Assembly (NCBI RefSeq): GCF_964213995.1
Contig: NW_027590338.1
Span: 310,001-374,000, forward strand
From: Mustelus asterias
Taxonomy: Eukaryota
Length of the DNA stretch: 64,000 nt
Direction of reading: 5' to 3'
Part shown: positions 19,666 through 63,960 of the stretch, in pieces
How the letters are laid out: each line of letters opens with the position of its first letter
Position numbering within the stretch: the first letter of the stretch is position 1
Program-made: the position numbers and the translations under genes
The notes under the pieces: generated by a model
What the model saw: only the letters and a program-made list of their open reading frames with translations
Database searches by the model: none
What the model was told of the DNA's origin: nothing

Positions 19666-20133
19666 ATATGACACAAAATCATATTTCTGATTATATGACA
19701 ATGATTCTCAGTTGATTCTGTACTCAGCAAAATCCCAGTTGTTTCTATATTCGCCAAGCCTCATTTGATACTACAGCGCACATTCTGGCAGTTATGGCAG
19801 CATAGAATTAATTCTCGGCTCATGTCATGATACTCCATATCTCTGTTGTTACTTCACTAGTCCCTCTCTCTCCTGATACTGCTCCAGAACATGTTACTGT
19901 TTGCATTACACGAGGCTCTGTATCAGTTAATACATTGCTGGAATCTGCCACCTATAAAGAAACATCGACAACACCTCAATCACCGCTGCACCAGTACACC
20001 GCCCTGTTTATACCGAATAATATCCTGTCTCTCATCATTGTTCTATTTCATGATTCGTTTATTGCTGCAATTGCCCCTCTCAAAGCTTATCAAGCCTTGG
20101 TTTGATATTACTGCATCGGCTTTGTCTCAGTTT

Positions 20134-21269
20134 ATAAGAACATAAGAAATAGGAGCAGGAGTAGGCCATCTAGCCCCTCGAGCCTGCCCCGCCATTCAAT
20201 AAGATCATGGCTGATCTGACGTGGATCAGTACCACTTACCCGCCTGATCCCCATAACCCTTAATTCCCTTACCGATCAGGAATCCATCCATCCGCGCTTT
20301 AAACATATTCAGCGAGGTAGCCTCCACCACCTCAGTGGGCAGAGAATTCCAGAGATTCACCACCCTCTGGGAGAAGAAGTTCCTCCTCAACTCTGTCTTA
20401 AACCGACCCCCCTTTATTTTCAGGCTGTGTCCTCTAGTTTTAACTTCCTTACTAAGTGGAAAGAATCTCTCCGCCTCCACCCTATCCAGCCCCCGCATTA
20501 TCTTATAAGTCTCCATAAGATCCCCCCTCATCCTTCTAAACTCCAACGAGTACAAACCCAATCTCCTCAGCCTCTCCTCATAATCCAAACCCCTCATCTC
20601 CGGTATCAACCTGGTGAACCTTCTCTGCACTCCCTCCAATGCCAATATATCCTTCCTCCTATAAGGGGACCAATACTGCACACAGTATTCCAGCTGCGGC
20701 CTCACCAATGCCCTGTACAGGTGCATCAAGACATCCCTGCTTTTATATTCTATCCCCCTCGCAATATAGGCCAACATCCCATTTGCCTTCTTGATCACCT
20801 GTTGTACCTGCAGACTGGGCTTTTGCGTCTCATGCACAAGGACCCCCAGGTCCCTTTGCACGGTAGCATGTTTTAATTTGTTTCCATTGAGATAGTAATC
20901 CCATTTGTTATTATTTCCTCCAAAGTGTATAACCTCGCATTTCTCAACGTTATACTCCATTTGCCATATCCTCGCCCACTCACTCAGCCTGTCCAAATCT
21001 CTCTGCAGATCTTCTCCGTCCTCCACACGATTCACTTTTCCACTTATCTTTGTGTCGTCTGCAAACTTCGTTACCCTACACTCCGTCCCCTCCTCCAGAT
21101 CATCTATATAAATGGTAAACAGCTGCGGCCCGAGTACCGATCCCTGCGGCACGCCACTAGTTACCTTCCTCCAACCGGAAAAACACCCATTTATTCCGAC
21201 TCTTTGCTTCCTGTCGGATAGCCAGTCCCCAATCCACTTTAACACACTACCCCCAACTCCGTGTGCCCT
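20134..21269 (-). mobile_element. Young 5'-truncated CR1 LINE with uninterrupted RT fragment
   Basis: 339-aa ORF 20226-21245 (SGVPQGSVLGP, KFADDTK); taagaaca tail. Confidence 0.95.
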
Positions 21270-38220: not shown

Positions 38221-39913
38221 GGGAGTGTCTCGGAGGGGAGTGTTGACCCGTTAGAGAAAATCTCCATTACAAGGGAGGAAGTGTTAGGATTTTAACTGGT
38301 ATAGATTCTTTAAATAGTATAGATTTTTTAACTAGTATAGATTTTAACAAGTAAAGATTCCACCAGGGCCTGATGGAATCTATCCCAGGCTGCTCAGGGA
38401 GACGAGAAATGAAATCGCTGGGCCTCTGACGCAAATCTTTGTCTCGTCACTGGACACAGGTGAGGTCCCAGAGGATTGGAGGATAGCTAATGTGGTCCCG
38501 TTATTTAAGAAGGGTAGGAAGGATAACCCGGGAAATTATAGGCCGGTGAGCTTGACGTCCATGGTAGGGAAGTTGTTGGAGAGCATTCTTAGAGATAGGA
38601 TGTATGCGCATTTAGAAAGGAATAAACTCATTAACGATAGTCAGCATGGTTTTGTGAGAGGGAAGTCATGCCTCACTAACCTGGTGGAGTTTTTTTGAAG
38701 AAATGACTAGAATGGTTGACGAGGGAAGGGCCGTGGATGTCGTCGATATGGACTTTAGTAAAGCGTTTGACAAAGTCCCTCATGGTAGGTTGGTGCAAAC
38801 GTTTGGCTCTCATGGGATAAAGGGGGAGGTGGCTAGATGGGTGGAGAACTGGCTTAGTCACAGAAGACAGAGGGTGGTAGTGGAAGGGTCTTTTTCCGGC
38901 TGGATGCCTGTGACTAGTGGTGTTCCGCAGGGCTCTGTATTGGGACCTCTGCTGTTCGTGATTTATATAAACGATCTGGAAGAAGGTGTAACTGGGGTGA
39001 TCAGTAAGTTTGCGGACGACACGAAACTGGCTGGACTTGCAGATAGTGAGGAACATTGTCAGAGGCTACAGAAGGATATAGATAGGCTGGAAATTTGGGC
39101 AAAGAAATGGCAGATGGAGTTCAATCCAGATAAATGCGAAGTGATGCATTTTGGTAGAACTAACGTAGGGGGGAGCTATACGATAAATGGCAGAACCATA
39201 AAGGGTGTAGATACGCAGAGGGATCTGGGTGTGCAAGTCCACAGATCCTTGAAGGTGACGTCACAGGTGGAGAAGGTAGTGAATAAGGCATATGGCATGC
39301 TTGCCTTTATAGGACGGGGCATAGAGTATAAATTTTGGGGTCTGATGTTGCAGTTGTATAGAAAGTTGGTTCGGCCGCATTTGGAATACTGCGTCCAGTT
39401 CTGGTCGCCACACTACCAGAAGGACGTGGAGGCTTTAGAGAGAGTGCAGAGGAAGTTTACCAGGATGTTGCCTGGTATGGAAGAGCTTAGTTATGAGGAA
39501 AGATTGGGTAAACTGGGGTTGTTCGCACTGGAATGACGGAGGATGAGGGGTGACCTAATAGAGGTGTATAAAATTATGAAAGGCATAGAGAGGGTGAACG
39601 GTGGGAAGCTTTTTCCCAAATCGGTGGTGACGTTCACGAGGGGTCATAGGTTCAAGGTGAGGTGGGGTAGGTTTAACACGGATATCAGAAGGACGTATTT
39701 TACACAGAGGGTGGTGTGGGCCTGGAATGCGCTGCCGGGCAAGCTGGTGGAGGCGGACACACTGGGAACGTTTAAGACTTATTTAGATAGCCACATGAAC
39801 GGAGTGGGAATGGAGGGATACAAAGGAATTGTCTAGTTTGGACCAGGGAGCGGCACGGGCTTGGAGGGCCGAAAGGCCTGTTCCTGTGCTGTATTATTCT
39901 TTGTTCTTTGTTC
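38221..39913 (+). mobile_element. 5'-truncated CR1 LINE (frameshift and stop in RT)
   Basis: ORFs 38492-38698, 38703-39536 and 39543-39836; (TTCTTTG)n tail. Confidence 0.95.
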
Positions 39914-46289: not shown

Positions 46290-46335
46290 ATGAGGTCGGC
46301 GATTTGTCTCAGTTTGTTGCTGACTTTCCTATCCG
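46290..46335 (+). CDS. IGHV: IgH leader exon MRSAICLSLLLTFLS(G)
   Basis: 46-nt phase-1 exon with donor g|gtgagt; hydrophobic signal peptide. Confidence 0.93.
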
Positions 46336-46469
46336 GTGAGTAGTTTTTTTTTAATTGTCCAAGTCTCCCACAGTTACTGTCTCAGTCTTAGTCTATCTCT
46401 GTAATATTCCAGAGTCAAAAATCATTACACCGGGATTAATCCTCGGGATTTTTGACATATGTTTTACAG

Positions 46470-46774
46470 GTGTCCAATCGGAGGTTGTGTTGACTCAGCC
46501 AGAGGCAGAGATCGGGCGTCCCGGAGGCTCCCTGACACTGACCTGTAAAACCAGCGGCTTCGATCTCGGCAGCCACTGGATGAACTGGATCCGACAAGTT
46601 CCCGGACAGGGGCTGCAGTTTCTGCTGTGGTACGATAGTTCATCAAACAACAACTACGCCCCAGCAATTAAAGATCGATTTACTGCGTCCAAAGACACTT
46701 CAAACAACATCTTCTCTTTGGAGATGACGAGGCTGAAGACCGAAGACACCGCCATCTATTACTGTGCAAGAGAC
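46470..46774 (+). CDS. IGHV: Germline IgM VH segment, open frame
   Basis: Acceptor ttacag|gt. Reads [48 protein letters not shown]...[11 protein letters not shown]. Confidence 0.97.
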
Positions 46775-46813
46775 CACAGCGAGAGGAACCAGGGATGGAC
46801 CCGAACAAGAACA
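46775..46813 (+). other. VH 23-RSS
   Basis: CACAGCG + 23 nt + ACAAGAACA. Confidence 0.92.
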
Positions 46814-47186
46814 GCTCGAGAGGGAATTCAGCAACTTCCATCATAACCTGACGGTCAGGATCTGTTTTAAATGTAATATTAAGGACAGTGATCAGAACCA
46901 AAACACAAACCGCTTCTGACAAACCTAACATAAAGGAAATTAAACATTTAACCGAGCAAACTCACAGACATAATGGGATGAGCTTTTCACTCTGCTTATA
47001 TTTACTGTTAACAGTTTCTGCAGTTACAGACCTGGATGATATTGCTCGTTTTAATATTTCTGAGACTTCGAGGAGATGTTTCCAGATTGTACTTTGTAAA
47101 CTGTTGCATAAATTGTAAATTATATCAAAAATTCTGGTCTATTTGTAGTGAATATTGAGCGGCAGTACTGAACAGAGACTGAGTGC

Positions 47187-47214
47187 AGTTTTTGTGCGGG
47201 TGTGTGTCACTGTG
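47187..47214 (-). other. D 5' 12-RSS
   Basis: AGTTTTTGT + 12 nt + CACTGTG. Confidence 0.95.
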
Positions 47215-47225
47215 ATACAGCAGTG
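47215..47225 (+). CDS. IGHD: Single DH segment ATACAGCAGTG (open in all frames)
   Basis: 11 nt between two 12-RSS. Confidence 0.93.
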
Positions 47226-47253
47226 CACAGCAGTTACTGTCAATACAAAAACC
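47226..47253 (+). other. D 3' 12-RSS
   Basis: CACAGCA + 12 nt + ACAAAAACC. Confidence 0.95.
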
Positions 47254-47580
47254 CCTCAGCACTAATTGACCGAGGATGGGGCAGTGCTCTGTTTTACAAT
47301 CCACCATTATTTACAGCACTGTATTATTTATGTCTAGCACTGCTCAAATAGCCAGAATTAACATGGAAAATTTACGATAACTATTCAATTATCATTTGGT
47401 GTTTCCAAAAACATATTCATCTGATGCTCTGTGAATTATAAAACATTAGGGTCATTTATGAAGAGCGAACGGTATCCACAAATACAATTAAAATTTCATT
47501 AAAAATGCAGTGATTTACTTTCCCTCTGGCTTGTGGATATTTAAAATAATGGTGGCTTTTTGTCTATTTTGTGCAGGGAT

Positions 47581-47619
47581 GGTTAGTGTCAGATCCAGCC
47601 CAGGGAATGTGACAGCGTG
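47581..47619 (-). other. JH 23-RSS
   Basis: GGTTAGTGT + 23 nt + CAGCGTG. Confidence 0.85.
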
Positions 47620-47667
47620 ACTACATCGCATACTGGGGCCAAGGGACCATGGTGACGGTGACTGCAG
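47620..47667 (+). CDS. IGHJ: JH segment YIAYWGQGTMVTVTA
   Basis: WGxG motif and donor cag|gtaag. Confidence 0.96.
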
Positions 47668-47949
47668 GTAAGAACCATGCATTTATTTAGTAACTATTTT
47701 ACTTGAGATTTTGTTTTATATTTTTATCGAATTTAATAATTCATTCGTTCACAGATTGAGATTTTTTTTTACAATGTTTCAGGTGATTCTGCTGAAAATG
47801 TGTTGTATAATTCCGCTGTTTATTGGCAAAAGGTGACGCTGAAGGATTCAGTCTCTGGTTGTTGTCATTTGGTGTTTATCTGCTGAGGACATTGTGTGGC
47901 TGGGTTACTTTAAATGCCGAAATTCTGTTAAACAGTTCGGCGTTTCTGC

Positions 47950-49085: not shown

Positions 49086-52000
49086 AATAATAAAATAAAG
49101 ATATGAGAGCATTCCATACACTTTAACTGATGCTTACTGTGTAAAATAAATCATGACTTATAACCCTCATTGAGAACGCCATTCATTGCGGCTATCACAA
49201 ATTACTTAATCAGCAAGTTTTTAAATAGGAGTAAAATAAATAAAATTTGAACATTTATTCCCAGTAATATAGCAAACTCACCAAGGATTATTTTATATTA
49301 ACATCATTAATCATTAATCGGCTTTCACAATTCTGCTGTGCTTTGAACATGATTAACATGGCCGGAAAAGTTTTTATTCTGCAAATGCTTTGTGATTGTG
49401 CCTGAAAGTATTTCATTGAAAACATGCTGATTCCACAGCAGCGCTCAGCATATCAATATATTTTTAATTAATCATTATATCCCAGATTAAGTTTGCATTC
49501 ACTTAAATAGGAGTTTTGCATTGCAGTTTGGCAATTTATGTATTCGGTTATTACATTATTTCATTGCAGGCGTAGCCACATTATTTCTCAAAGTAATAGG
49601 TAGTTGGATAAAGAGATAATTAATCACTACTCTAATCGTAAACAGCTTTCTGAGATGTGGAATGCGCTGTCAGTCAATTAATTGTTCATTTGATTATGTT
49701 TGATTTGTAGTAAGGTATCCAGAAACTGGCAAGAGATTGACAAGTAAATGCTTCAAATTAAACAGGTTAATTTATGTTACAAAAGGTTAATATTTGCTCT
49801 GCAATTAATAATGGCATCCTGTTTCCCATTACTGCTGCAGACAGGATATCATTATACGGATAACAAATGGCTGAAGAGAATAATTGATTCTATCTGAGCC
49901 TTATGTTTAATTCTTATTGAATATTAAATGAAGAACAAAATGTCGTCTTTTTTTGTTCATCATGTTTCAGTGTTGCAGAGGAGTTGAATAAATTGTGCTC
50001 ATTGTGTTTTGCACTGTTTAATTGGGATCTTCTTTAATTAAACAATATGATCAATAATTAAATTACAGGGAAGGCCTGAAGTATTAAATCTAGGAAGCAA
50101 TTTTATAGATCATAAACTGCCAGGCTGTTACAGTATATATTCGCACAGAAAAATTCAGTTTAACACTTTTGTAGGTTAAAAGAAAGCATTTAGAGTAAAA
50201 GTAAAATATTAAGATGCAATTAGATGTAAGTAGAAGTATTTTAGGTATCTGACTGTTTGCATCCAGTAATTTGAAGTTTATTGTTTAACATTATTTAAGA
50301 TTTAATTGACACTTAATTATTTAAAGTTCCAGACAAAAGCAGGATTTGAATCAGTGAAAGCTATTATTATTATAGAATACAAATCAGCCAACAGGAGTAC
50401 TAACTGACAATTAACAATAACCTAAAATATAAATATAATTAATTCAACATAAGTGAACTACTACAATATTTAATTGGATCAAAAATGAATTCAGACAACA
50501 ATGCATTTCTTTACTCAGCTCTGCTCCGCTCGATACAGTGTTTTGCCTCGATGATTTTGTTGCTTTCATTTAATTAAAGAATTCGATCAAATCACCGAAT
50601 AATTTTCAGTGTAAATGTTTGCTGGTTTGTTTAATTCTGTGACACAGCATTTCTGTTATGTAAAAAAAAAGTCTATCCTGAGTACATTTAATGTACTCAT
50701 TTTCATCGAAATTATATTTTTGCCCTGTTTTCGATATTTGAGGCAGACAGGGATACATTGCTGAAAGTTATAGGGTGTTTTGAAATTAATATCAGTTTAA
50801 TTTAAAAGAGGTTTTTGAATTGTTGTTGTTGTAGGTTGACCATTGTTCAATTAGAATAAATCAGTTTCAATGTGCTTCACAGATTGAACAAATCTATCTG
50901 CTGGGAACTCGATTGTTACACCGTTTGTTTCTGTTCTGTTTCTGTGCGCGTGGTTACCGTGTTGGGACCAATAATTTTTCTGACTGCTTGTAAATCTTCT
51001 GATTCCTTCTCCTGTATCTTCGGGGCGAAAGTTTGGCTTATTTCTGCAATCAACTTGTGCGGTGAGGAATGTGACAGTTTGACTTGATTTTTTTACTAGG
51101 CGTCTCAGAAATGAGATCCCTGACCCAGAATGTGACCGTCGGACAAAGCAGAAACGTCAGAAAGAGTGTGGAAGGAGATTTGTTTTTTTTTTAACCAGTG
51201 ATGTACCAACCTTGGGAATTTTCGATGAACAAATACAAAGGGAGATATAACCTATTGCACTCCGTATTATAGCAGACTCTTTCCAAATTAATAGGAGATT
51301 TAGACCGTCAATTCCGGTTGTGTCTTACTTTTAGTCCATGAATGGGATTTTAGAGTCGCTGGCTAGGGCAAAATTTGTTATCTGTCCCTAATTGTCATTT
51401 CAAAAAGTGCTGATATGAAGTATCCTTGAATAACTGCAGACCATGTGGTGTCGATATGCCTACAGTGCCATTCGGGATGAAGTTCCAGGATATTAACCCA
51501 GCGACTGTGAAGGAACGGCGATATTGTTTCACGTCAGGATGTTGTGTGTTTTGGAGGGGAGCTTGCAAGATGTAGTTTGGACAGTGTATTCTATGGAGTC
51601 TTGGTGATTTGCTGCAACGCATCATATGTGTGATACACCCTGCTGTCACTGCTTGTTGGTGATGGAGGAAGTGGATGGGGTGAATGTCGGGGTGGGAAAG
51701 TTTCCTGGGAAGCGACGACTTTCTTTAGATTTTCTCAACAGTCGCTCATTGTGGCAAGTGGAAATTATTCAATTATAGACCTGAATTGTGAATGGTTTAA
51801 ATGTTTCTCCAACCGTTAGCCCGCGTGCCATATTCAGTTCATTTACTAAACACCCACCCACCCCCACCCCACACACTATGAGAATTGCTGAGAGTGCGTG
51901 TGGAATGTGAGGGTGAAGATGATTATTAAGACTGAGAGACCCAGATAGAAAATTACACGTACCACACTCTCACACACATAAATACATACATCTGCACTCA

Positions 52001-53439
52001 TATATTATCTCTCGCTCTCTCTTGCTCTCTCGCTCACTCTCACTCTCTCTCTCACACACCCACAAACAAACAAACACACACATACATATTCATGCTCACG
52101 CTCTCTCTCAAGATTTCTGTCAAACCCATATGCATTCTATCTCTCACACGTCGCACACGCTTTCACACGCAGAAAAGCAGATATACTCTCGCTCTCCCAA
52201 GCAATGTCTCAAAAACACTCACGCACATTCTCACTTACACACAGAGACTCAATCCCACGCTCTCGCACACCACACTTTTCTCTCTCTCGTCCTCTTTCTC
52301 ACACACACTATCTTTCACATACCCTCTGCCACAAACTCACTCTGTCCAAATTCATTCACAATCTCACAATCCCTCTTGCACACAAACTCTCTCTCACACA
52401 TGCACATATTTCTCTCTTTCCCACACACTCTCTCTCTCTCAAATTATTTCACACATGTACATTCTTGATCTCAAAACCGGTCTCTCTCAAAGACTCAATC
52501 TCACAATATACATGCACACACTCTCCTACAAACACACTCTCTCTCATAGGCACAGTTTCACATCTCGCACATATATCCTCTCTCACAGCACCCACTCTCG
52601 CATGCACTATGTCTCTGACATACTATCTGCCAAAAATGTTCATTCTGTCTCACACTCATTCACGCACGCTCTGTCACAATCCGTCTTGCACACGCATTGT
52701 CTCTCTCTCTCACACACACCCACACATTTATCTTCCCCTTTCACACAATCATTCTCTGACACTCTCACACATGCCCATTCCTGCTCTCACACACTGTCTC
52801 TCTCAAAAGCACTCCCTTTCACACAAACACAGACACGTGCACACGCTCACACATACATTCTCTCTTACACGCAGGCACACTCTCTCACAAAAGCACAATC
52901 TCACACTCTCGCACACACATTGTCTCTCACACACGCTCACATGCACTGTCGCTGTCTCATACACTTTGTCACATATGCTCACTTTGTCTCACACACACTC
53001 TCTCCCATACAAACACTCTTCCACACCCATTTTCTCTGACAGGCACATATTTCACTATCTCTTTCACACTCACTCTCTCACACTATATCACACATGCGCA
53101 TAATTGATCTCAAATGTCTCTCACAAACACATACTCTCTTTCACACGTACATTCACTCACACACAGTCTCTCTGTGTCTCACACACGCACACACATGTGT
53201 AGTAAATGCATCTCTCTTAAAGACTCTACCTATCACAGACACAAAAGTTCTCTCGCTCTCGCAGGTCACACGTCACAAACACTCACACAGAAAGACATGC
53301 ATACTCTCGCTCTCCCAAGCAATCTCTCACACCTCCATACAGAAAAATACTCAAGCACATACTCCCGACCATTATCTTCCTCTGACACACTCGCACAGTC
53401 ACTCTGTCTCATTTGCACACTTATTCTCGCTCACATCCT

Positions 53440-55480
53440 GATACAAGGATATTATTAAACTGGAAAGAATACAGAAAATATTTACTAGGATGCGAGCGGG
53501 AATTGATGGTTTAAGTTACAAAGAGAGGCTGGATGGACTGGGACTTTTTTCCTGGAGCGTGGGCGGCTTGGGAGTGGTCTTATAGAGGTCTATGAAATAA
53601 TGAGGGGCATAGATGAGGTAGATAGTGAACATCTTTTCCCAAAGGTAGGAGAGTCTAAAACTAGGGGCAGAGGTTTAAGGTTCGAAGGGACCTAGTGCTG
53701 AACTTGCAGGGGCCCTGGCAGACATATTTAAAATGTCAGTATTCACGGGGGAGGTGCCGGATAATTGGAGGGTGGCTCATGTTGTTCCGTTGTTTAAAAA
53801 AGGTTCAATAAGAAATCCGGGAAATTATCGGCCAGTAAGTTTGACGTCGGTGGTGGGCAAGTTATTGGAAGGTGTGATAAGGGATAGGATCTACAAATAT
53901 TTGGATAGACAGGGACTTATTAGGGAGAGTCAACGTGGCTTTGTGCGTGGTAGGTCATGTTTGACCAATCTATTAGAGTTTTTCGAGGAGGTTACCAGGA
54001 AAGTGGATGAAGGGAAGGCGGTGGATGCTGTCTACCTGGATTTCAGCAAGGCCTTTGACAAGGTCCCTCATGGGAGGGTAGTTAGGAAGGTTCAGTCGCT
54101 AGGTATACATGGGGAGGTAGTAAATTGGATAAGACACTGGCTCAATGGAAGAAGCCAGAGAGTGGTTGTGGAGGATTGCTTCTCTGAGTGGAGGCCTGTG
54201 GCTAGTGGTGTGCCGCAGGGATCGGTGTTGGGTCCATTGTTGTTTGTCATCTATATCAATGATCTGGATGATAATGTGATAAATTGGATCAGCAAGTTTG
54301 CTGATGATACAAAGATTGGAGGTGTAGCGGACAGTGAGGAAGGTTTTCAAAGCTTGCAGAGGGATTTGGACCAACTAGAAAATTGGCCTGAAAAATGGCA
54401 AATGGAGTTTAACGCGGACAAGTGTGAGATATTGCACTTTGGAGGGACAAACCAAAGAAAAACGTACAGGGTAAATGGTAGGACTCTGAAGAGTGCAGTT
54501 GAACAGAGGGATCTGGGAATACAGGTACAGAATTCCCTAAAAGTGACGTCACAGGTGGATAGGGTCGTAAAGAGTGCCTTTGGTACATTGGCCTTTATAA
54601 ATCGGAGTATCGAGTATAAAAGTTGGAGTGTTATGGTAAGGTTATATAGGGCATTGGTGAGGCCGAATTTGGAGTACTGTGTACAGTTTTGGTCACCTAG
54701 TTACAGGAAGGATGTAAATAAGATTGAAAGAGTGCAGAGAAAGTTCACAAGGATGTTGCCAGGACTTGAGAAGCTGAGTTACAGAGAGAGATTGAATAGG
54801 TTGGGACTTTATTCCCTGGAGCGTAGAAGATTGAGGGGAGATTTGATGGAGGTGTATAAGGTTTTGATGGGTATAGATAGAGTGAATGCAAGCAGGCTTT
54901 TTCCGCTGAGGCTGGGGGAGAAAAAAACCAGAGGGCATGGGTTAAGGGTGAAAGGAGAAAAGTTTAAAGGGAATATTAGGGGGGGCTTCTTCACGCAGAG
55001 AGTGGTGGGAGTGTGGAATGAGCTGCCGGATAAAGTGGTAAATGCAGGGTCACTTTTAACATTTAAGAAAAACTTGGACGGGTTCATGGATGAGAGGGGT
55101 GTGGAGGGATATGGTCCAAGTGCAGGTCAGTGGGACTAGGCATAAAATGGTTCGGCACAGACAAGAAGGGCCAAAAGGCCTGTTTCTGAGCTGTAATTTT
55201 CTATGGTTCTATGGTTCTATGGGAGAAATACAAAAGAGTCCAGAGAGGCATTTTGTTTCACTCAGAGGGTGGTGAGCGTCTGGAACGCGTTGCCGGGGCA
55301 GTCGTAGAGACACACACAATTTTGTATTTTAAAAAGCATTTAGGTACAAGGGTAAAATGGCTTTAGAGAGATATACGCTAAATGCGGACAGTTGGGACTA
55401 ACTTAATGGCAAGAACTGGGCGGCATGGAGAAGCTGGGCCGAAGAGCCTGTTTCCATGCTGTAAATATCTATGACTCTAT
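53440..55480 (+). mobile_element. Older CR1 3' fragment hosting a nested CR1
   Basis: 53440-53690 continues at 55221-55480; compare the uninterrupted sibling at 55637-56435. Confidence 0.8.
53691..55220 (+). mobile_element. Young 5'-truncated CR1 LINE, 468-aa open RT fragment
   Basis: ORF 53733-55139 with full RT motifs; (TTCTATGG)n tail; GGGA duplicated at 53687-53690 and 55221-55224. Confidence 0.95.
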
Positions 55481-55636: not shown

Positions 55637-56435
55637 ATGATGCATTTTGGTGGATTGAACCAGGGCACGACTTATTCAGTTAATGGTAGCGCGTTGGGGC
55701 GAGTTACAGAACAAAGAGAGCTCGAGGTACATGTTCAGAGCTCCTTGAAAGTGGAGTCACAGGTGGACAGAGTGGTGAAGAAGGCATTCGGGATGCTTGG
55801 TTTCATTGGTCAGAACATTGAATACAGGAGTTGGAATGTCCTGTTGAAGTTGTACAAGACATTAGTAAGGCCACACTTGGAATACTGTGTGCAATTCTGG
55901 TCACCCTATTAAAGAAATGATATTATTAAACTAGAAAGAGTGCAGAAAAGGTTTAGCAGGATGCTACCGGGACTTGATGGATTGAGCTATAAGGAGAGGC
56001 TGGATGGACTGGGACTTTTTTCTCTGAAGCGTAGGAGGCTGAGGGGTGATCTTCTAGAAGTCTATAAAATAATGCGGGGCACAGATCAGCTAGATCGTCA
56101 ATATCTTTTCCCAACGGTAGGTGAGTCTAAAACTCGAGGGCATAGGTTTAAGATGAGACGGGAGAGATACAAAAGTGTCAGGAGGGGCTATTTTTTCACA
56201 CAGAGGGTGGTGAGTGTCTGGAACAAGCTGCCAGAGATAGTAGTAGAGGCGGGTACAATTTTGTCTTTTAAAAAGCATTCAGATAGTTACATGGGTACGA
56301 TGGCTATCGAGGGATATGGGACAAATGCGGGAAATTGGGATTAATTTAGGGTTAAAAACAAAAGGGCGGCATGGACAAATTGGGCCGAAGGGCCTGTTTC
56401 CATGCTGTAAACCTCGATGACTCTATGATTCCATG
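55637..56435 (+). mobile_element. 5'-truncated CR1 LINE
   Basis: ORFs 55637-55912 and 55940-56344; atgactct-type tail. Confidence 0.9.
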
Positions 56436-57101
56436 ACATGTGCCTCAGACATCCTCACACACACACCACTCACAAAGTTTCTCTCTTTCACGCACACACT
56501 CATACAGAAGAACTCTCTCTACCTCGTCTGTCTCTCTCTCTCTCTCGCAAACACACCCTATCTCACATATATTCTCACACGTTCTCTATCTGTCTCTCTC
56601 ATTCTGTCACCAATAATCTGCAACAAACTCACTGTCATGTGCAACTACATTATCTCTCTCTGTCACATACACACATTCTCTGTCTCTCATACACCCTTAG
56701 TCACACCCACTCTCTCCTCTTACACACAGACACCGTGTCTCACACATTTACAAACTTAGGATCTCACACACACATGTCTCTCACAGAAACACCACACAGA
56801 AAATCTCTCCCTCTCCCACTCACACAATAACACCCTATCTCATACACATTCTCTCACATGCTCAATCTCTCTCTCATTCTCATCCCAACATCTATCACAC
56901 ACTCACTGTCACGCGCAGGTAAATTAACTCTCTCTCTTTCACACACGGACTCTATCCTGAACACTCACACATACCGTGTTTTTTCTCTCTCACTGTATCT
57001 TAGACACACTCTCTCTCTCACACACGTATACTACATAACCAACACATATCTCTTTCTCATACACATAAAGCCACACTCGTATATACACATACACACACAC
57101 A

Positions 57102-57330
57102 GACGGGGGAAAGGCAGAGAGCCGGGGGAGAGAGCAGAGAGCTGGGCGAAAGGGCAAATAACCTGGGGAAAGGGCGAAGAGCCCGGGAAAGTGTAGACAG
57201 CTGGGGGGAAATGTTTAGAGCCGGGACAGAGGGCAGGGAGCTGGGGGAAAGGGCAAAGCACCCGGAGAAAGGGTAGAGACCCAGGGAAGAGGGTAGGGAG
57301 CTGGGACAGAGGGCAGAGAGCCGGGGATAA
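57102..57330 (+). repeat. G-rich 20-bp tandem repeat (~11.5 units, consensus GAGCTGGGGGAAAGGGCAGA), switch-region-like
   Basis: 20-bp period read directly; AGCT at 57140, 57199, 57239 and 57299; ends 260 bp 5' of Cmu1. Confidence 0.88.
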
Positions 57331-57589: not shown

Positions 57590-57889
57590 CGACACCATCT
57601 CCTCCGACTCTCTACAGCCTGGTCTCCTCCTGTCATCAACACAACTCCGACGGTTCCGTCACCTATGGCTGTTTGGCGATGGACTACTCTCCAGATGTCT
57701 CCAAACTGACCTGGAAGAAAAATGGGCTGCCGATCACCACTGGGTTTAAGACATACCCATCAGTGAGAAACACGAAGGGAACCTACACACTGAGCAGCCA
57801 GTTAACCATCACCGAGTCAGAGGGAGACTGCAGCAAAATTGACTGTGAGGTTCGACACAGCGGCTCAGACAAAAGCATTGGAATGCAAT
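57590..57889 (+). CDS. IGHM: IgM Cmu1 exon
   Basis: 300 nt, phase 1; [15 protein letters not shown]...[10 protein letters not shown]...TWKK...IDCEVRH; AG/GT intact. Confidence 0.96.
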
Positions 57890-58019
57890 GTAAGTGTGTG
57901 GAACCTGGGCAAGAGAGGGACGCTGTGATTGAACTATATCAGGCCTTAGTTATAACTGATTTGTAGCACTCTGAAAATTTTGAATTATGCAAATTATGAC
58001 TGAAAAGTTGCTGAGAACC

Positions 58020-58760
58020 AAAGACCAACAGAAATGTAACTGTGCAGAATGAGGCCATTTAGCCCATCATGTCTGGCCAAAAGGGAGAACAAATACACTA
58101 GCCAGACATTTTAAGCCTATTTTCCAGCCCTTGATCCGTAGCTTTGCAGGCGAAAGCATTTGAGATGGAGACCCAGATACCTTTTAAATGACCATGCTCC
58201 CTGGTAATTGAGCCTTCCACTTGGGGAGTGAAATTTTCAGCCTACATCCCTTATAATTTTGTGAACCACAATTACGTCACGCCTCAGCCTCTTCTTTTTC
58301 TGAGGAGAACAATCCCTGCCTGTCCAATCTCTCCTCATCGCTGCAATTCTCAGCCCCGGAAACATTCTTGTAAACCTCATCTCTCTCCAGAGTCATCACG
58401 TCATTCCTGCAATGTGGTGACCAGAACTGTACAGCAAACTCCAACCGTGGCCTAACTGGCATTTTATACAGCTCCATCATTGCATCCCTGTTTTGGAACT
58501 CAATATCTCACATAATGGAGGAACTAACCCACATGATTTTCTGATCAACTTGCAGCTGTCCTAGCATCTACAAGACCTGTGGAAATGCATTCCAAGGTCT
58601 CGCATTTCCACAATCCCTCTCAACCTTCCAGTTTATTGACTATCCCCTTGCTTTGTTTGACCTCCCCAAATGCATTGCGTGACACTTCTGACGGTTGAAT
58701 TCGATTCGCCAATTCCCTGCCCATTCAACCAAACCACGGATATCATTCTCAAGTCGGCAG
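58020..58760 (-). mobile_element. Old degenerate CR1 in the Cmu1-Cmu2 intron
   Basis: ORF 58277-58480 (RPRLEFAVQFWSPH). Confidence 0.75.
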
Positions 58761-58842
58761 CTCTCCTGCTAAAATATAAGAACTAATTTTAATTGTTATC
58801 AATTGATTCGGCAAGTAGCGTCTAAACATGTGTTTGTTTAAG

Positions 58843-59148
58843 GCGACATCCCCCCAACCGTTATCCTTACCGTGAGTTCCAGTGACGAAATCACAAGCAG
58901 GAAATTTGCAACCATCGTCTGTTCGATCATCGATTTCCAGCCAAAGTCTATGACGGTGAAGTGGCTGAAGAATGGCCAACACATGGATTCAGGAATTGTC
59001 ACCTCTTCCGCCTGTGAAGTGAATGGGAACTTCTCGGCGAGCAGTCGGCTGATAGTCTCCGCTCGGGAATGGTTCAGCAAAGCAGTCTATACCTGCCAGG
59101 TCACTCATCAAGGATTCACTCAGAGTCAGAACATCAGCGGATCTCTGG
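58843..59148 (+). CDS. IGHM: IgM Cmu2 exon
   Basis: 306 nt; [12 protein letters not shown]...[21 protein letters not shown]...YTCQVTH; AG/GT intact. Confidence 0.96.
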
Positions 59149-60064
59149 GTAAGAGACTCAAACCGAGGATAAAATATATCATTTCAATGTTAATCGAAAT
59201 TAGGGATCTATTAAAGTTAGTACAAAGATAGAACAACTTCGGATTTACTGTCATGTGGTTTGCTGCATTAGGACAGTGGCTCATTGAGAATTTCATCACA
59301 ACAGCAATTTTTGTTATTCCTTCATGAGATGTGTATTTATTTCCCATCCCAGAGGGCACTTAAGTGTCAACCACATTGCTGTGGACCTGGAGTCACATGC
59401 ATGCCAGGTCAGATAAAGACAGCAGATTTACTTTTCTAAAGGGCATTCGTGAACCAGGTGGGTTTTTACAACAATGGCTTCATGATGATCATTTGACTTT
59501 TAATCATAGATTTTTATTAAAGTCAAATTTCACCATCTGCAGTGGTGAGATTCGAATATGTGTCCCCAGAGTCATGCCCTAGGTTACAAGCCCATTGACA
59601 ACACCACCATGCCACCGACTCACCTGGAAATCGTGTTCACTTCCATTTTGAAGTAATATAGTGAGCGAGGTGGCCTTGATGTCAGCTTTTTCCTGAGACA
59701 GCTGGTAAGATTTGGAGAGACAGTCGGTGTCGGACTGTTTCACAGGTCACAGTATAGGGGTAAAATATTGGAAAGTACATCCACCCTACTGATAAGCCAA
59801 CGGTCAGTACTTTTTTCCTGAGTTCAGGATGGTGTATTTGTTTAGGAATGCTGCAATCCTGATTCATGAGAATGATACTGTTGCTAAAATACTTTAATAA
59901 AAAGAATAGTTTCACAGAGCAGGCTGGTTTTCCATCCTCCATCGAAGTTGAAAGGTGATAGTTAGACGTTGATATCTCGAAGGCGACTACGTCTCCTTCA
60001 GGCTGAAGACTGCTGTCCTGCTTCTGAAAGAGAACTAGGGTGGATTTTCATTTGTCATTCACAG

Positions 60065-60373
60065 GTCCTTCCCAGTGCCCTGATACCACAGTGACGATAC
60101 AGCCACCACCAATAGAACAGGTCTTAATGGAGGCTACCGTGACCTTAACCTGCATCGTTTCTAATGCTCCTTATGGAGTCAACGTGTCCTGGATCCGAGA
60201 CAGGAAGTATTTGAAATCAGAGATTGCCGAAAAGCCTGGAGCGGATCCTGACAGCGTGGTCAGCAACTTAAACATCTCGACACAAGCCTGGCTGAGTGCG
60301 GCTGTGTTTGACTGCGTGGTGAGCCATCAGGATCTGCCGACTCCGTTAAGAAAATCCATCCACAAGGAAACAG
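60065..60373 (+). CDS. IGHM: IgM Cmu3 exon
   Basis: 309 nt; [20 protein letters not shown]...VSW...[13 protein letters not shown]; AG/GT intact. Confidence 0.96.
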
Positions 60374-60868
60374 GTGAGCTGAGAGATTGAAGCAATAAAT
60401 GCGTCACTGTGTCTATTTCCAGTGTCAGTGGACTGGTCAATATTCAGTATTCAGTGCATTAATGGTGTCTCCTGATTGGAAACTCCACTAACTAAAGACT
60501 CTGGTCCTGCAGATATTTTTACGGGGAGATTTGATGTGTTGATGAATTAAAAGTGAACTGAAGGCGATGTTATTGGGTTTAGATCGAATAAGGAGGGAGG
60601 AGCCTGATGTGGAGCATGAAAACCAATAAAAAAGCAGATCAGTTGGGCCGAAGAGCCTGATTCAGTGCTGTAAACTTTCTGAAACTTTCCAGTCCAACCC
60701 GCTGAGTTATTTGAGAAAACAATTGTGTTCACCTCTCCTCCAAGCTGGAAGTCAAAAATAGAAACATTTAAAATCGAAAGCGAAGCACATTTTTCTGATA
60801 CCTAGCCAGCAGTTTCATTGTCTCCAGAATTCTCCAGTTTATTGACATTTATTGTACATTTTCTGCAG

Positions 60869-61260
60869 ATCCAAATCCGCGGGAACCGTTCGTCTCTGTC
60901 CTCTTGCCCTCGGCAGAAGAAGTCTCCGCTCAGAGATTCGTCTCCCTCAGCTGCTTAGTGAGACGTTTCTCCCCTCGAGAGATCTTCGTCAAGTGGACCG
61001 TCAACGACAAGCCGGTGAATCCTGGGAACTATAAGAACACCGAGGTGGTCGCGGAGAGCGGGAATAGCTCCTTCTTCATGTACAGCCTGTTATCCATTGC
61101 AGCAGAGGAATGGTCCAGCGGTGCTTCTTATTCCTGTGTGGTGGGACATGAAGCCATCCCCTTGAAGATCATCAACAGAACAGTTGACAAATCCAGCGGT
61201 AAACCCAGTTTTGTGAACATTTCCCTTGCACTGATGGACACCGTTAATTCATGTCAATGA
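60869..61260 (+). CDS. IGHM: IgM Cmu4 exon plus secretory tailpiece
   Basis: LSCLV...VKW...[11 protein letters not shown], tail [20 protein letters not shown] with an N-glycosylation sequon and penultimate Cys. Internal donor for the TM form agcg|gtaaa at 61198/61199. Confidence 0.97.
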
Positions 61261-61287
61261 GAATCACTCGGTTACATTAAAAACTTC

Positions 61288-61302
61288 AATAAAAAGAATA
61301 AA
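61288..61302 (+). terminator. Secretory-form polyadenylation signals
   Basis: AATAAA at 61288-61293 and 61297-61302. Confidence 0.8.
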
Positions 61303-62339
61303 ATCGTTTTCCTCCAACGATAAATGAAATACCCAATTGCTTAATTGATTGGTTTTCAATTTTACTTCCACTATGTATCTTTGGTTTGAGTCAGGTATTT
61401 TCACGTCTCGGGCTCAAGCCTTGTTGAACCAATGCACCCAGCTCAGATACACCCTGGGTTAGAGACAGAGTAGAGCACATTCATTGCAGTATTCTGCAAA
61501 ATATCTTCACCGACTTTCCTCCCACTGAGGAGAAATCTGACAATTTCAAAATTTCTGACAAACAAACACAATTTACATCTCGGTGTTCCTGCTTCTCTCG
61601 TTGTCCATGCCTTTACCATTGATGTCAGCTTTAAGCTGCTGCACCACACCCACTGGGAACTGGAGTGAGGGTCACACAGAAACATGGAGCAACAATCCCC
61701 CCATCAGAGAGAGGGGAGAGTGAAATTGTGAACATACCGGATTCCTACTCACCCAACAAAGAGAGGGGAGAGCCGTAGCTAACCCATGTACCATCACTTC
61801 CTCAATGAAAAGAGGAGGAATGTCATTATTTAATCCACTCACCACCACCTCGTCAGCGGTTAGAACCATCAGGCACATTGCTTCACCGGGTAGAGAGAGG
61901 GAAATTATGAGCTCACTCCCTCCCTCTTCGCAAGTAACGTGTTTGGAAGGGACCAGCTCTCTACTAGAAGAACCCAGTTGCCAACAGTACAAATTAGCTT
62001 CTGGTTTATTTGCTGCAGAGTTTGAAGTATCATTATCCTAATCAATGTGATGCATATATACTTATGCAACATAATTTAAAAATGTTTCTGCACTCTTGTT
62101 CCTGTTAATCATGTCCTGGCATTGATTTCCCATAATGCAAATTGAAACAAATGATTGAATCCTCCCCAGTTTTCACTGTTCTGTCCCTGATGTTTCCGAG
62201 ATGCATCAATGAATGATTTCATTCGTTCTCCTGATATCACCGTGCCACTCACATAAACTACATTCATACAGCAAAACATTGAAAATATGCTCCATTATAC
62301 GTATTGTTTGGATCATTTTCAGTTAATGATTGCGGTGAA

Positions 62340-62841
62340 ACTTGGAGCAACAGCTAAAAAATACACACACTGACAATACTCCACAAAACTGTCACAATTA
62401 TAAATACACACATAAGCGCGCACACACACACTCACACTCACACACATACACACACACACATCGACACAAATGCACAACTACACACACAAATACACATACT
62501 CACACATATGCACACAAATACAGAAAGACACATGTAAATATACACACACAAACGCATACACATACCCCCACACACATACATATACAGAAATAGGGACAGG
62601 CACATTCAAATACAGACACAGAAACACACAAATACACAACAGATACACTTTCACACACCATAGGTACACTCAATACTTGCACAGACGAACACACATGCAG
62701 AGAAACAAGAATGCACACACAAATGCACTCATGGGCAAAACATGCACAAACAGAAATACACGCTTACGCAAATACACCCACACAAAAATACACCCATACA
62801 CAAACACATCCGTACACAAATATACATAGGGACACACCCAT

Positions 62842-62873
<32 letters not shown>

Positions 62874-63960
62874 ACAGACGGACACATACACACACACACA
62901 CATACGAACACATAGACACGCGCTCTTGGACAAACAGACACTAAAACAACAACATACACACACATAATCAAATATGTACAAACGCACACATGTACACATG
63001 AAACACACAAGTACATACACATACACATACGTGAGTAGGTACAGACCCAAACACAAACACATACATGCATAGACACAATACAGACAGATACACACGCATG
63101 CAGACCCACATAAATACACAAGCACATACTTAGACTCAAATAAATACATATATTAGCACACGTTCACGCTGATAGGAATATAGATATAAAGACACACAAT
63201 GTTATACACATTCACAAACATATATGGAAATACATATAAACAAATCACCAGGCTGCATACAGAAGAACAGACTGCAAAACATTTACACACAAACATGTAG
63301 ACGCAAACATTAACATGCTCATAGAACAGAACACCATAGCACACATTACTACACATCGAAACACAAATATACATCAACACACCGTTATAAAGAATGTCAA
63401 CACGTGTATACATACACTGACATGTTAACAGGCGTGCACACAGACACATGGAGAAACAGACGCACACAGAAAGGGAAACAGTAAGTAGTTACCTGATGAA
63501 GGGGCAACGCTCCGAAAGCTCGTGCAACCAAATAAACCTGTTGGACTTTAACCTGGTGTTGTGGGACTACTTACTGTGCCGACCCCAGTCCAACGCCGGC
63601 AACTCCACAGAAAGGGAAACAAACATTACTAGAGTGACAGAAATTAACACAGAGCAATAGGCATAAACACATGTGCACCCATTAAGAGTGGCATTAATAT
63701 ATATTCATAGACTTCACACAATAATAGAGTCATATATACACAATGACAAAAGAATAAAATATGCGCACAGATGCAGACACACAACTACACAAATCAACAA
63801 TCACTGGCAAATGAACGTGCACATTAACACTCATAATCACATATTAACTCAGAGCCAAAGATTAATGCAGAGCACGAGATGCTCATGCACACGCACACAA
63901 ATGCAAAATCTTCAATACAAACGGTAGGCAAATGATGAAAGTACAATTTAAACGTGACTT
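62340..63960 (+). repeat. CA-rich low-complexity tract
   Basis: Degenerate (CA)n/(CATA)n. Confidence 0.9.
63481..63605 (+). mobile_element. Short Penelope-like terminal element containing a minimal hammerhead motif
   Basis: CTGATGA-a-ggggc/aac/gctcc-GAAA-gctc; flanked by the direct repeat cacagaaagggaaaca (63465-63480, 63606-63621). A related fragment lies at ~14868-14968. Confidence 0.65.

What the first reader, a model, noticed from the sequence alone, without database searches (positions are those of the whole stretch)
47187..47253. Single-D IgM cluster whose D/RSS junction has the exact geometry of a germline RAG signal joint
Seen: only one D (12-RSS on both sides) lies between V and J. 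It is exactly 11 nt and ends in GTG, so the upstream nonamer (47187-47195) also sits exactly 23 nt from a second, embedded heptamer AGCAGTG (47219-47225; reverse complement CACTGCT). That heptamer abuts the 3' heptamer CACAGCA with no gap, giving GTG|CAC, i.e. nonamer-23-heptamer|heptamer-12-nonamer. Established: elasmobranch IgM clusters are usually V-D1-D2-J (D1 12/22-23, D2 12/12), and germline RAG-type joins occur in sharks. From memory and unverified: shark D1 is ATACTACAGTGGGT-like, i.e. this D plus GGT. Inference: RAG paired a cryptic 23-RSS inside D1 with the 3' 12-RSS of D2 in the germline, excised the D1 tail, spacer and D2, and left a signal joint on the chromosome. The product is a new, still rearrangeable V-D-J gene with shorter CDR3 potential.
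Basis: partly seen in the sequence, partly recalled or inferred. Interest (0 to 1): 0.85.

Follow-up and report, generated by a model that had tools for sequence, protein, structure and literature searches.

The report
Shark IgM gene with one D
A shark antibody heavy-chain gene has one short D piece instead of the usual two, because the head of the first D now sits directly against the recombination signal of the second, most likely after the antibody-gene cutting enzyme acted in germ cells.

Summary
One intact-looking IgM minilocus lies on the + strand. Its layout is V with a 23-RSS, then 12-RSS, an 11-nt D and 12-RSS, then J with a 23-RSS. The D ends in GTG and abuts CAC, so the nonamer-23-heptamer|heptamer-12-nonamer geometry is real.

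Paralogue contigs match the left flank up to 47225 and then continue with GGT plus a consensus heptamer, which is a D1. Another contig matches from 47225 rightwards and carries a 5' heptamer and a different D2 before it. So the D is a D1 head fused to the D2 3' RSS.

The mechanism is not settled. Three RAG routes give this same product:
- an ordinary D1-D2 coding joint in which D2 was nibbled away;
- a hybrid joint of the D1 coding end to the D2 3' signal end;

The geometry follows from D1's own sequence minus 3 nt, so it does not discriminate among them. First-stage notes list at least seven other single-D (V-DD-J) clusters on other DNA of this genome, which favours the ordinary route. Verdict: a new variant of the known germline-joined shark Ig clusters, of moderate interest.

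The parts
46290..46335 (+). Leader exon of the VH gene (MRSAICLSLLLTFLS, then a split Gly codon), followed by a GT donor
   Evidence: Translation. Exon limits are inferred from the GT/AG sites and are not checked with RNA.
46470..46774 (+). VH exon (V-set domain, ends ...YYCARD)
   Evidence: Pfam V-set E = 2.6e-16. The best relative is a Scyliorhinus torazame protein at 83% identity.
46775..46813 (+). V 23-RSS: heptamer CACAGCG, 23-nt spacer, nonamer ACAAGAACA
46814..47186 (+). V-D intersegment of V-D1 type
   Evidence: Paralogue contigs that end in a D1 match this flank, for example X22 record 20 over 46937-47225 with 26 other letters. It has no similarity to the right flank.
47187..47214 (-). 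5' 12-RSS of the D: nonamer 47187-47195, spacer 47196-47207, heptamer 47208-47214. Read on the - strand it is CACAGTG-12-ACAAAAACT.
47215..47225 (+). The only D, ATACAGCAGTG (11 nt). It is open in all three frames (IQQ / YSS / TAV) and equals the first 11 letters of the paralogous D1.
   Evidence: table 7: two X21 contigs run on after 47225 with GGT and then CACAGTG.
47219..47225 (-). Embedded heptamer-like CACTGCT. CAC is kept and 4 of 7 positions match the consensus. It lies 23 nt from the nonamer at 47187-47195.
   Evidence: Its function is untested.
47226..47253 (+). 3' 12-RSS of D2 type: heptamer CACAGCA, 12-nt spacer, nonamer ACAAAAACC
   Evidence: a contig with a different D2 and its 5' heptamer matches from 47225 rightwards. 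V-D-D joined contigs also start matching at 47225.
47254..47580 (+). D-J intersegment of D2-J type
   Evidence: Exact contigs are X21 record 15 (47253-47638, 0 other letters) and X22 record 21 (47245-47652, 1 other letter). Paralogue contigs start at 47225.
47581..47619 (-). J 23-RSS: nonamer GGTTAGTGT, 23-nt spacer, heptamer CAGCGTG (letters as on the + strand)
   Evidence: It fell below the threshold of my scan.
47620..47667 (+). JH segment (..YIAYWGQGTMVTVTA) followed by a GT donor
57673..61260 (+). Four C-mu exons. The open frames lie within 57600-58000, 58800-59250, 60000-60400 and 60850-61300. The last ends in a secretory tailpiece.
   Evidence: Pfam C1-set E = 8.3e-11, 4.1e-18, 1e-09 and 2.2e-20. 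Exon limits are approximate.

Best explanation
This is an apparently working shark IgM heavy-chain minilocus that descends from a normal V-D1-D2-J cluster. A germline deletion removed the last 3-4 letters of D1, the D1 3' RSS, the D1-D2 spacer DNA, the D2 5' RSS and all, or all but one letter, of D2. The head of D1 now stands directly against the D2 3' 12-RSS.

The most likely route is the ordinary RAG reaction between the D1 3' RSS and the D2 5' RSS in germ cells. That is a D1-D2 coding joint of the V-DD-J class, with unusually deep nibbling of D2 and no added letters.

The product has a tetrapod-like grammar, V(23) / 12-D-12 / (23)J. It needs two joining events instead of three and offers a shorter CDR3.

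Shown: the anatomy and the D1-type and D2-type flanks. Inferred: RAG as the agent, the germline as the place, and the route.

The confidence of 0.45 is for the route. That the D is a D1 head fused to the D2 3' RSS I hold at about 0.85.
For: - Anatomy and an intact gene.
- Flank switch: two X21 contigs match up to 47225 and go on with GGT, a consensus heptamer CACAGTG and unlike DNA. One X24 contig matches from 47225 on and has, before that place, a 12-nt spacer, CACTGTG and a different D2. X22 record 20 matches 46937-47225 and has 44 further letters that do not fit.
- The two flanks are unrelated to each other.
- Both deletion ends sit at or within 4 nt of RAG cleavage sites.
- D1-D2 joining before V or J joining is a documented somatic intermediate in nurse shark (passages of PMC2435157). 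In one clone there, D1 was cut back to four letters.
- Germline RAG joining is established for shark Ig genes (abstract listing of PMC2193156; passages of PMC5192425 and PMC4279169).
- First-stage notes list at least seven other single 12/12-D clusters read as D1-D2 joins in this genome (unverified leads).
- A joined contig, table 5c, keeps only the last six or so letters of a D2. So deep trimming of D2 does occur in this organism, though this is a single case.
Against: - A coding joint normally keeps letters of both partners. Here at most one letter (G, 47225) can come from D2. The nibbling would have had to stop exactly at, or 1 nt before, the heptamer, which is a rare outcome.
- The junction shows neither P nor N letters and is exactly heptamer-flush. 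That is what a signal end looks like.
- I could not read the other single-D clusters, so I do not know whether they are close kin of this one.
- The kind of runs X21, X22 and X24 is not on record, so germline presence is not independently shown.
- No exact contig listed bridges 47177-47244.
Confidence: 0.45

Rival explanations
1. Germline hybrid joint. RAG paired the genuine D1 3' 22/23-RSS with the genuine D2 3' 12-RSS, which point the same way. Instead of the standard inversion, the D1 coding end (trimmed by 3 nt, GGT) was joined to the intact signal end of the D2 3' RSS. The DNA in between, from the D1 3' RSS to D2, was lost.
For: - It gives exactly the observed letters with only a 3-nt loss on the coding side and an intact heptamer, which is typical of a signal end.
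- It uses two real RSSs and obeys the 12/23 rule. The D1 3' heptamer CACAGTG is seen in the loose ends.
- Passages of PMC2193153 report a germline hybrid joint between D1 and D2 in a shark cluster (their reference 9). They state that hybrid joints show base loss and addition.
Against: - Hybrid joints are a minority outcome of V(D)J recombination (PMC2193153 calls them 'less common').
- Pairing of the D1 3' RSS with the D2 3' RSS rather than the D2 5' RSS has not been shown in sharks.
- The spacer length and nonamer of the D1 3' RSS were not visible, because one search shows only 30 loose letters.
- Nothing on the chromosome distinguishes this route from the other routes.
Confidence: 0.2
2. The D1 5' nonamer together with the embedded heptamer CACTGCT, 23 nt away, acted as a cryptic 23-RSS. 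It paired with the D2 3' 12-RSS. The DNA between them left as a coding-joint circle, and a precise signal joint (GTG|CAC) stayed on the chromosome, where it now serves as the 3' edge of a new D.
For: [quoted passage not shown]
- The substrate exists. Paralogous D1 segments carry the same embedded heptamer, followed by GGT.
- The topology, with both RSSs pointing away from the excised DNA, does leave the signal joint on the chromosome.
- The idea that signal joints gave rise to D segments is in print as a speculation (PMC2193153).
- A first-stage note (s1-892526; unverified) reports a nonamer-12-heptamer|heptamer-22-nonamer motif elsewhere in this genome.
Against: - The heptamer matches the consensus in only 4 of 7 places.
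- Its nonamer is shared with a near-perfect 12-RSS (7/7 and 8/9), which should win RAG binding.
- Use of cryptic RSSs is generally far rarer than use of real ones (established knowledge, not measured here).
- The geometry adds no independent weight, because any loss of exactly GGT from D1 produces it.
- Many ordinary D1-D2 joins seem to exist in the same genome.
Confidence: 0.12
3. A deletion not made by RAG, or a second change to an older single-D cluster. Examples are end joining of a random break, replication slippage on the short shared G/GTG, or conversion between clusters.
For: - One letter (G, 47225) is shared by the D1-type and D2-type sequences, and both D segments contain GTGG. So there is a little microhomology.
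- Diverged contigs with a one-D layout exist (X24 record 29; X21 record 16), so the family has a history of change.
Against: - Both ends of a roughly 400-bp deletion fall at or within 4 nt of RAG cut sites, and the right end is flush with a heptamer.
- Slippage on the shared GTGG would leave a 12-nt D, not the 11 nt seen (my reasoning).
Confidence: 0.13
4. Not a germline feature: an assembly collapse, or a somatic V-DD-J rearrangement caught in the assembly.
For: - No exact contig listed bridges 47177-47244.
- At 47179 all contigs of X22 and X24 carry another letter.
- Somatic V-DD-J intermediates exist in shark lymphocytes (PMC2435157).
- The best holders may be the assembly's own samples.
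Against: - Exact contigs from three samples cover both flanks close to the D: 46923-47155, 46967-47163, 47245-47652 and 47253-47638.
- Two diverged contigs show the same one-D layout.
- The junction is not inside the homologous part of D1 and D2, where a collapse would fall.
- A somatic joint would rarely reach consensus depth and usually carries N letters.
Confidence: 0.05

Closest known systems
Partly germline-joined elasmobranch IgH clusters (VD-J, VD-DJ, VDJ), attributed to RAG activity in germ cells
   Same: This is a cluster-type IgM gene in which the DNA between two rearranging segments, and the two RSSs that faced each other, are gone, while the remaining RSSs stay usable. Reviews describe such clusters (passages of PMC5192425, and PMC4279169). 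The abstract of PMC2193156 attributes them to RAG in germ cells.
   Different: The join is between D1 and D2 only, with V and J still free (V-DD-J). The reviews I read do not list that form as a germline state. In the held library the term occurs in 1 of 1 paper, and there only as a somatic intermediate. The D2 coding part is missing altogether.
Somatic V-DD-J intermediates of nurse shark IgM genes (Malecek et al. 2008, PMC2435157)
   Same: D1 is joined to D2 first, leaving V with its 23-RSS and J with its 23-RSS around a 12/12 D. This is the same layout as here (passages).
   Different: Those are lymphocyte products with N and P additions. This one is in a genome assembly, has no added letters, and keeps 0-1 letter of D2.
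Germline hybrid joint between D1 and D2 in a horned shark cluster (Kokubu et al. 1988, as interpreted by Lewis and Wu 2000, PMC2193153)
   Same: A non-standard RAG product is fixed in the germline at the D1/D2 pair of an IgM cluster (passages).
   Different: That case is an inversion of the RSS-bounded DNA between D1 and D2. Here the DNA is deleted, and a different RSS pair would have to be used. The 1988 paper itself is not held.
Tetrapod and bony-fish IgH grammar: V(23) / 12-D-12 / (23)J
   Same: The RSS spacer grammar is the same, and a single D takes part per rearrangement (general description in PMC2435157).
   Different: Here it is a one-V, one-D, one-J minilocus with its own C-mu, not a translocon.

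Membership tests
Elasmobranch IgM heavy-chain cluster (minilocus) | Split-leader VH exon with a 3' 23-RSS | tested here: met
   Pfam V-set E = 2.6e-16.
Elasmobranch IgM heavy-chain cluster (minilocus) | JH with a 5' 23-RSS and a splice donor, and four C1-set C-mu exons with a secretory tail downstream on the same strand | tested here: met
   The J RSS is weak (nonamer 7/9, heptamer 5/7).
Elasmobranch IgM heavy-chain cluster (minilocus) | Two D segments (D1 12/22-23, D2 12/12) between V and J | tested here: not met
   Only one D, flanked 12/12. V to J is 845 bp.
Germline-joined cluster by standard coding joint (D1-D2) | Loss of the intersegment DNA and of the two RSSs that faced each other; left flank of D1 type and right flank of D2 type | tested here: met
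   loose ends at 47225 on both sides. One search, flanks unrelated to each other.
Germline-joined cluster by standard coding joint (D1-D2) | The junction keeps coding letters of both partners | tested here: inconclusive
   At most one letter (G, 47225) can be from D2.
Germline-joined cluster by standard coding joint (D1-D2) | Present in DNA of non-lymphoid or germ cells | not testable with these tools
Chromosomally retained signal joint | Heptamer-to-heptamer fusion without loss or gain, each heptamer with a nonamer at 12 or 23 nt | tested here: met
   AGCAGTG|CACAGCA, with 23-nt and 12-nt spacers. Met in form only, because the left heptamer matches the consensus at 4 of 7 places.
Chromosomally retained signal joint | The left element is a site that RAG can cleave in 23-RSS mode | not testable with these tools
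   No RIC model or assay is available here.
Chromosomally retained signal joint | The product cannot be explained by coding-end processing | tested here: not met
   Loss of GGT from D1, plus either loss of D2 or a hybrid joint, gives the same letters.
Hybrid joint | A coding end of one partner joined to the intact signal end of the other; the RSS pair obeys 12/23 | tested here: inconclusive
   The letters fit (D1 minus 3 nt joined to an intact heptamer). The spacer of the D1 3' RSS is not visible in the 30 loose letters. The fit is not unique to this route.

The most novel reading that the evidence does not exclude
The GTG|CAC junction is a true germline signal joint. RAG used the D1 5' nonamer with a heptamer embedded in D1 as a 23-RSS, paired it with the D2 3' 12-RSS, threw out the coding DNA between them as a circle, and left on the chromosome a signal joint that works as a new, shorter D. 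That would be a natural case of a D boundary made from an RSS fusion. It would also be a live example of the old idea that D segments can be born from signal joints.
Probability: 0.12. Interest if true: 0.75.

Novelty: new variant of a known kind. Interest (0 to 1): 0.45.

Why it matters
Sharks are the one group in which RAG has demonstrably edited antibody genes in the germline.

This cluster shows that such editing can turn a three-join V-D1-D2-J gene into a two-join V-D-J gene with the same RSS grammar as tetrapod heavy-chain loci, while the gene stays rearrangeable. Together with the other single-D clusters noted in this genome, it offers a series of independent or related D1-D2 events. 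From these the spectrum of germline RAG products (coding, hybrid or signal-type) could be read.

If the flush junction proved to be a signal-end product, it would show that non-standard RAG outcomes create new gene segments. If it is a deeply nibbled coding joint, it is one more member of a known phenomenon.

Tried and rejected
Fetching paralogous clusters as DNA:
- A protein search with the 60-aa open frame across the D found no candidate.

Literature for this D or for germline single-D clusters:
- The 11-letter D gave 9 of 9 unrelated papers.
- 'V-DD-J' occurs in one paper, as a somatic state only.
- The 'single D' search was swamped by 'single domain'.
- Searches gave nothing on point.
- Kokubu 1988 is not held.
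- Supplements are closed. Figure S1 of PMC2435157 (junction trimming) could bear on how rare a 12-nt loss from D2 is.

Rejected readings:
- D equals D2 with D1 simply lost. The left flank runs on into a D1 in paralogues, and D2 is a different sequence.
- The two flanks are duplicates of each other (one search shows no such repeat).
- Slippage on the shared GTGG. That would leave 12 nt, not 11.

Species was not pinned down beyond a galeomorph shark. I ran no search with joined C-mu exons; the exons were scanned apart.

Full report
WHAT IS THERE

- The VH exon ends at 46774 (...YYCARD). It is followed by a 23-RSS: CACAGCG, 23 nt, ACAAGAACA, at 46775-46813.
- 373 bp further on lies a 12-RSS in D-5' orientation: nonamer 47187-47195, spacer 47196-47207, heptamer CACTGTG 47208-47214.
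- Then comes the 11-nt D, ATACAGCAGTG (47215-47225).
- Then comes a 12-RSS: CACAGCA 47226-47232, spacer, ACAAAAACC 47245-47253.
- The J 23-RSS is at 47581-47619 and JH is at 47620-47667.

A scan of both strands of the whole window for RSS-like sites gave five. Three of the five are the V and D signals, and no second D lies between V and J. The last seven letters of the D (AGCAGTG, reverse complement CACTGCT) lie exactly 23 nt from the upstream nonamer and abut the 3' heptamer. This gives GTG|CAC, an ApaLI site at 47223.

THE GENE AROUND IT

- The leader (46290-46335, MRSAICLSLLLTFLS plus a split Gly codon) and the V exon are open.
- The D is open in all three frames.
- J reads YIAYWGQGTMVTVTA and is followed by a GT donor.
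- Four C1-set exons follow at about 57.6-61.3 kb. The last ends in a secretory tailpiece.
- The V domain is V-set. Among 51 proteins with E <= 0.001 out of 53 candidates, its best relatives are shark proteins: Scyliorhinus torazame at 83%, Chiloscyllium punctatum at 78% and Heterodontus at 74%.

So this is an intact-looking IgM minilocus of a galeomorph shark. The J-to-C-mu1 intron is about 10 kb and holds reverse-transcriptase fragments.

Instead I laid Logan contigs of four public runs on 46300-47800 at 80% likeness.

Runs X21, X22 and X24 are one organism, three samples and one study. They hold exact pieces of the window:
- X21 record 15: 47253-47638, 0 other letters.
- X22 record 19: 46923-47155, 0 other letters.
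- X22 record 21: 47245-47652, 1 other letter.
- X24 record 28: 46967-47163, 0 other letters.

They are therefore the window's species, and possibly its own samples.

These runs also hold many paralogues. 183, 121 and 67 contigs were laid for X21, X22 and X24, of which 63, 48 and 25 were under 90% alike. Only the best-supported rows are printed. Not shown are 146 loose ends, 765 pieces, 429 other letters and 64 indels.

Among the printed loose ends, two fall exactly at the junction.
- Two X21 contigs match the window up to 47225. They then continue for a median of 149 letters with GGT, the consensus heptamer CACAGTG and unlike DNA. This is a D1 that equals the window's D plus GGT, followed by its own 3' RSS.
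- One X24 contig matches from 47225 rightwards. Before that place it carries 255 unlike letters that end in a 12-nt spacer, the heptamer CACTGTG and the letters ATAACTGGGTG. This is a different D, a D2 with its 5' RSS.

X22 record 20 matches 46937-47225 with 26 other letters and has 44 more letters that do not fit, probably on the same side. Three contigs in which a V end is joined through 10-30 other letters also start matching at 47225 (tables 5 and 5c). These are V-D-D joined forms that keep the D2 3' RSS. The two flanks of the window's D show no similarity to each other.

The left flank is V-D1 DNA with the D1 5' RSS and the D1 head. The right flank is the D2 3' RSS with D2-J DNA. Because the G at 47225 is present in both kinds of paralogue, the switch is at 47224/47225 or 47225/47226.

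WHAT THIS DOES AND DOES NOT SHOW

It shows a deletion derivative of a two-D cluster. The deletion's left end is 3-4 nt inside D1, and its right end is flush with, or 1 nt before, the D2 3' heptamer. Both ends sit next to RAG cut sites, which makes RAG the likely agent (inference).

It does not identify the route. Three RAG reactions give exactly these letters.
(a) The standard D1 3' RSS x D2 5' RSS coding joint, with D1 trimmed by 3-4 nt and D2 by 11-12 of its 12 nt, and nothing added.
(b) A hybrid joint after pairing of the D1 3' RSS with the D2 3' 12-RSS. These point the same way. Joining the D1 coding end (minus GGT) to the intact D2 3' signal end deletes the DNA between them.

It appears at the junction as soon as GGT is lost, so it carries no weight of its own.

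CONTEXT IN THE SAME GENOME

These are first-stage notes, shown as titles only. They are unverified leads.
- Two-D clusters: s1-891526, s1-892468.
- VD-D-J: s1-890411, s1-890416.
- V-D-DJ: s1-893204.
- Clusters with a single 12/12 D read as germline D1-D2 joins, at least seven notes: s1-892839, s1-893218, s1-892857, s1-893245, s1-891529, s1-892890, s1-891489.

So the scan has found single-D clusters before, on other DNA of this genome. Six of these seven notes span 73-79 letters, against 67 here. If they are measured nonamer to nonamer, that would mean D segments of about 17-23 nt. This is my inference from the lengths and I did not check it.

One search agrees in part.
- X24 record 29 bridges 47099-47328 in one piece: 233 letters, 18 other letters, 5 gap letters.
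- X21 record 16 (846 letters) has a middle piece on 47175-47265, between diverged intersegment DNA. That piece is given as 102 letters for 91 places, which would fit about 11 extra letters at the D. This is tentative.

Both contigs are diverged copies with a one-D layout. Ordinary D1-D2 joining thus seems frequent in this genome, and this cluster would be the short extreme.

One note, s1-892526, reports a nonamer-12-heptamer|heptamer-22-nonamer motif elsewhere. If real, it would show that signal joints can persist in this germline. I could not look at it.

LITERATURE

- Reviews list VD-J, VD-DJ and VDJ as germline-joined forms and ascribe them to RAG in germ cells (passages of PMC5192425; passages of PMC4279169; abstract listing of PMC2193156). 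My term search of PMC2193156 found no 'signal joint' or 'hybrid joint' in its text.
- V-DD-J is described as a somatic intermediate in nurse shark, along with the absence of a strict joining order. One clone kept only four letters of D1 (passages of PMC2435157).
- Lewis and Wu (PMC2193153, passages) make three relevant points. Signal joints are exact RSS fusions. Hybrid joints are a less common outcome that shows base loss and addition. One shark cluster pair differs by an inversion between D1 and D2 that a germline hybrid joint 'exactly predicts'. They also speculate that D segments arose from signal joints.
- The term V-DD-J occurs in 1 of 1 paper of the held library, the nurse shark one. 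Searches gave no description of a germline V-DD-J or single-D IgM cluster.
- Older subscription papers are not held; Kokubu 1988, for example, is missing. Supplements are closed. So 'not in print' is not established.
- PMC12227049 (passages) concerns linkage of IgH clusters with TCR alpha/delta. It says nothing on D number.

WEIGHING

These weights are inference, not computation.
- Route (a) has by far the highest prior, because it is the normal reaction and the genome seems full of its products. But it needs a rare trimming outcome.
- Route (b) needs a minority joint type and an unproven RSS pairing. It explains the intact heptamer and the 3-nt loss without strain, and it has a germline precedent in sharks.
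- Route (c) explains the letters perfectly. But it needs RAG to use a 4-of-7 heptamer whose nonamer belongs to a near-consensus 12-RSS.

My weights are about 0.45 for (a), 0.20 for (b), 0.12 for (c), 0.13 for a non-RAG or secondary deletion, and 0.05 for an artefact or a somatic junction.

LIMITS

- All of the evidence on the flanks and on paralogues rests on one read-laying run on assembled contigs. Contigs show presence, not depth or absence.
- The kind of the runs is not on record, so the joined V-D-D contigs may be somatic or germline.
- No exact contig among those listed bridges 47177-47244. At 47179 all contigs of X22 and X24 carry another letter, while in X21 about 254 of 1400 depth units carry the window's letter.
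- The D1 3' spacer and nonamer were not visible.
- No RIC score or assay was possible.

VERDICT

The specific signal-joint mechanism is one of three indistinguishable RAG routes and is not the most likely one. This is a new variant (germline V-DD-J with D2 erased) of a known kind of shark Ig gene editing, and it is of moderate interest.

Noticed in passing
window 1483-2628 (- strand): Two C1-set exons lie on the opposite strand near the window's start (Pfam C1-set E = 2.1e-05 and 3e-11). They closely resemble the C-mu3 and C-mu2 translations of the + strand gene. They belong to a second, inverted IgM constant region. No V, D or J RSS was found for it in the window. A first-stage note (s1-892562) calls it a headless C-mu.
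   Followed up: partly
window 46768/46770 joined to 47225 (contigs of X21 and X1, tables 5 and 5c): In these contigs a V end is joined through 10-30 other letters, with D1-like and D2-like parts, to the D2 3' RSS and D2-J DNA. These are V-D-D joined forms that are still unjoined to J. They may be germline-joined clusters or transcripts or DNA of lymphocytes. The run kind is unknown.
   Followed up: no
window 47099-47328 and 47175-47265 (X24 record 29; X21 record 16): These are diverged contigs with a one-D layout like the window's. One has a net 3 extra letters and the other perhaps about 11 extra letters near the D. They suggest a family of single-D clusters with D segments of different length.
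   Followed up: partly
window 53733-55139 (+), 20226-21245 (-), and further open frames at 4301-4930, 7990-9010, 18347-19701, 38703-39836 and 55637-56344: There are many reverse-transcriptase fragments of LINE type (RVT_1 E = 2.3e-35 and 2.6e-13 for the two scanned; the others by likeness of their translations). One lies inside the roughly 10-kb J-to-C-mu1 intron of this gene.
   Followed up: partly
window 52000-53500, 56400-57200, 62300-63900: These are long low-complexity tracts that read as runs of H, T, S and L in several frames. They flank the C-mu exons. A first-stage note (s1-892438) calls 57102-57330 switch-region-like.
   Followed up: no
another piece of the same genome (note s1-892526): A first-stage note reports a nonamer-12-heptamer|heptamer-22-nonamer motif, which is the form of a D1/D2 signal joint kept in the genome. 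If real, it bears on whether signal joints persist in this germline.
   Followed up: no
window 46775-46781 and 47613-47619: The V and J heptamers both depart from the consensus with a CG at the inner positions (CACAGCG; CAGCGTG on the + strand). The J nonamer matches at only 7 of 9 places. So the V and J signals of this cluster are weaker than the two D signals.
   Followed up: no
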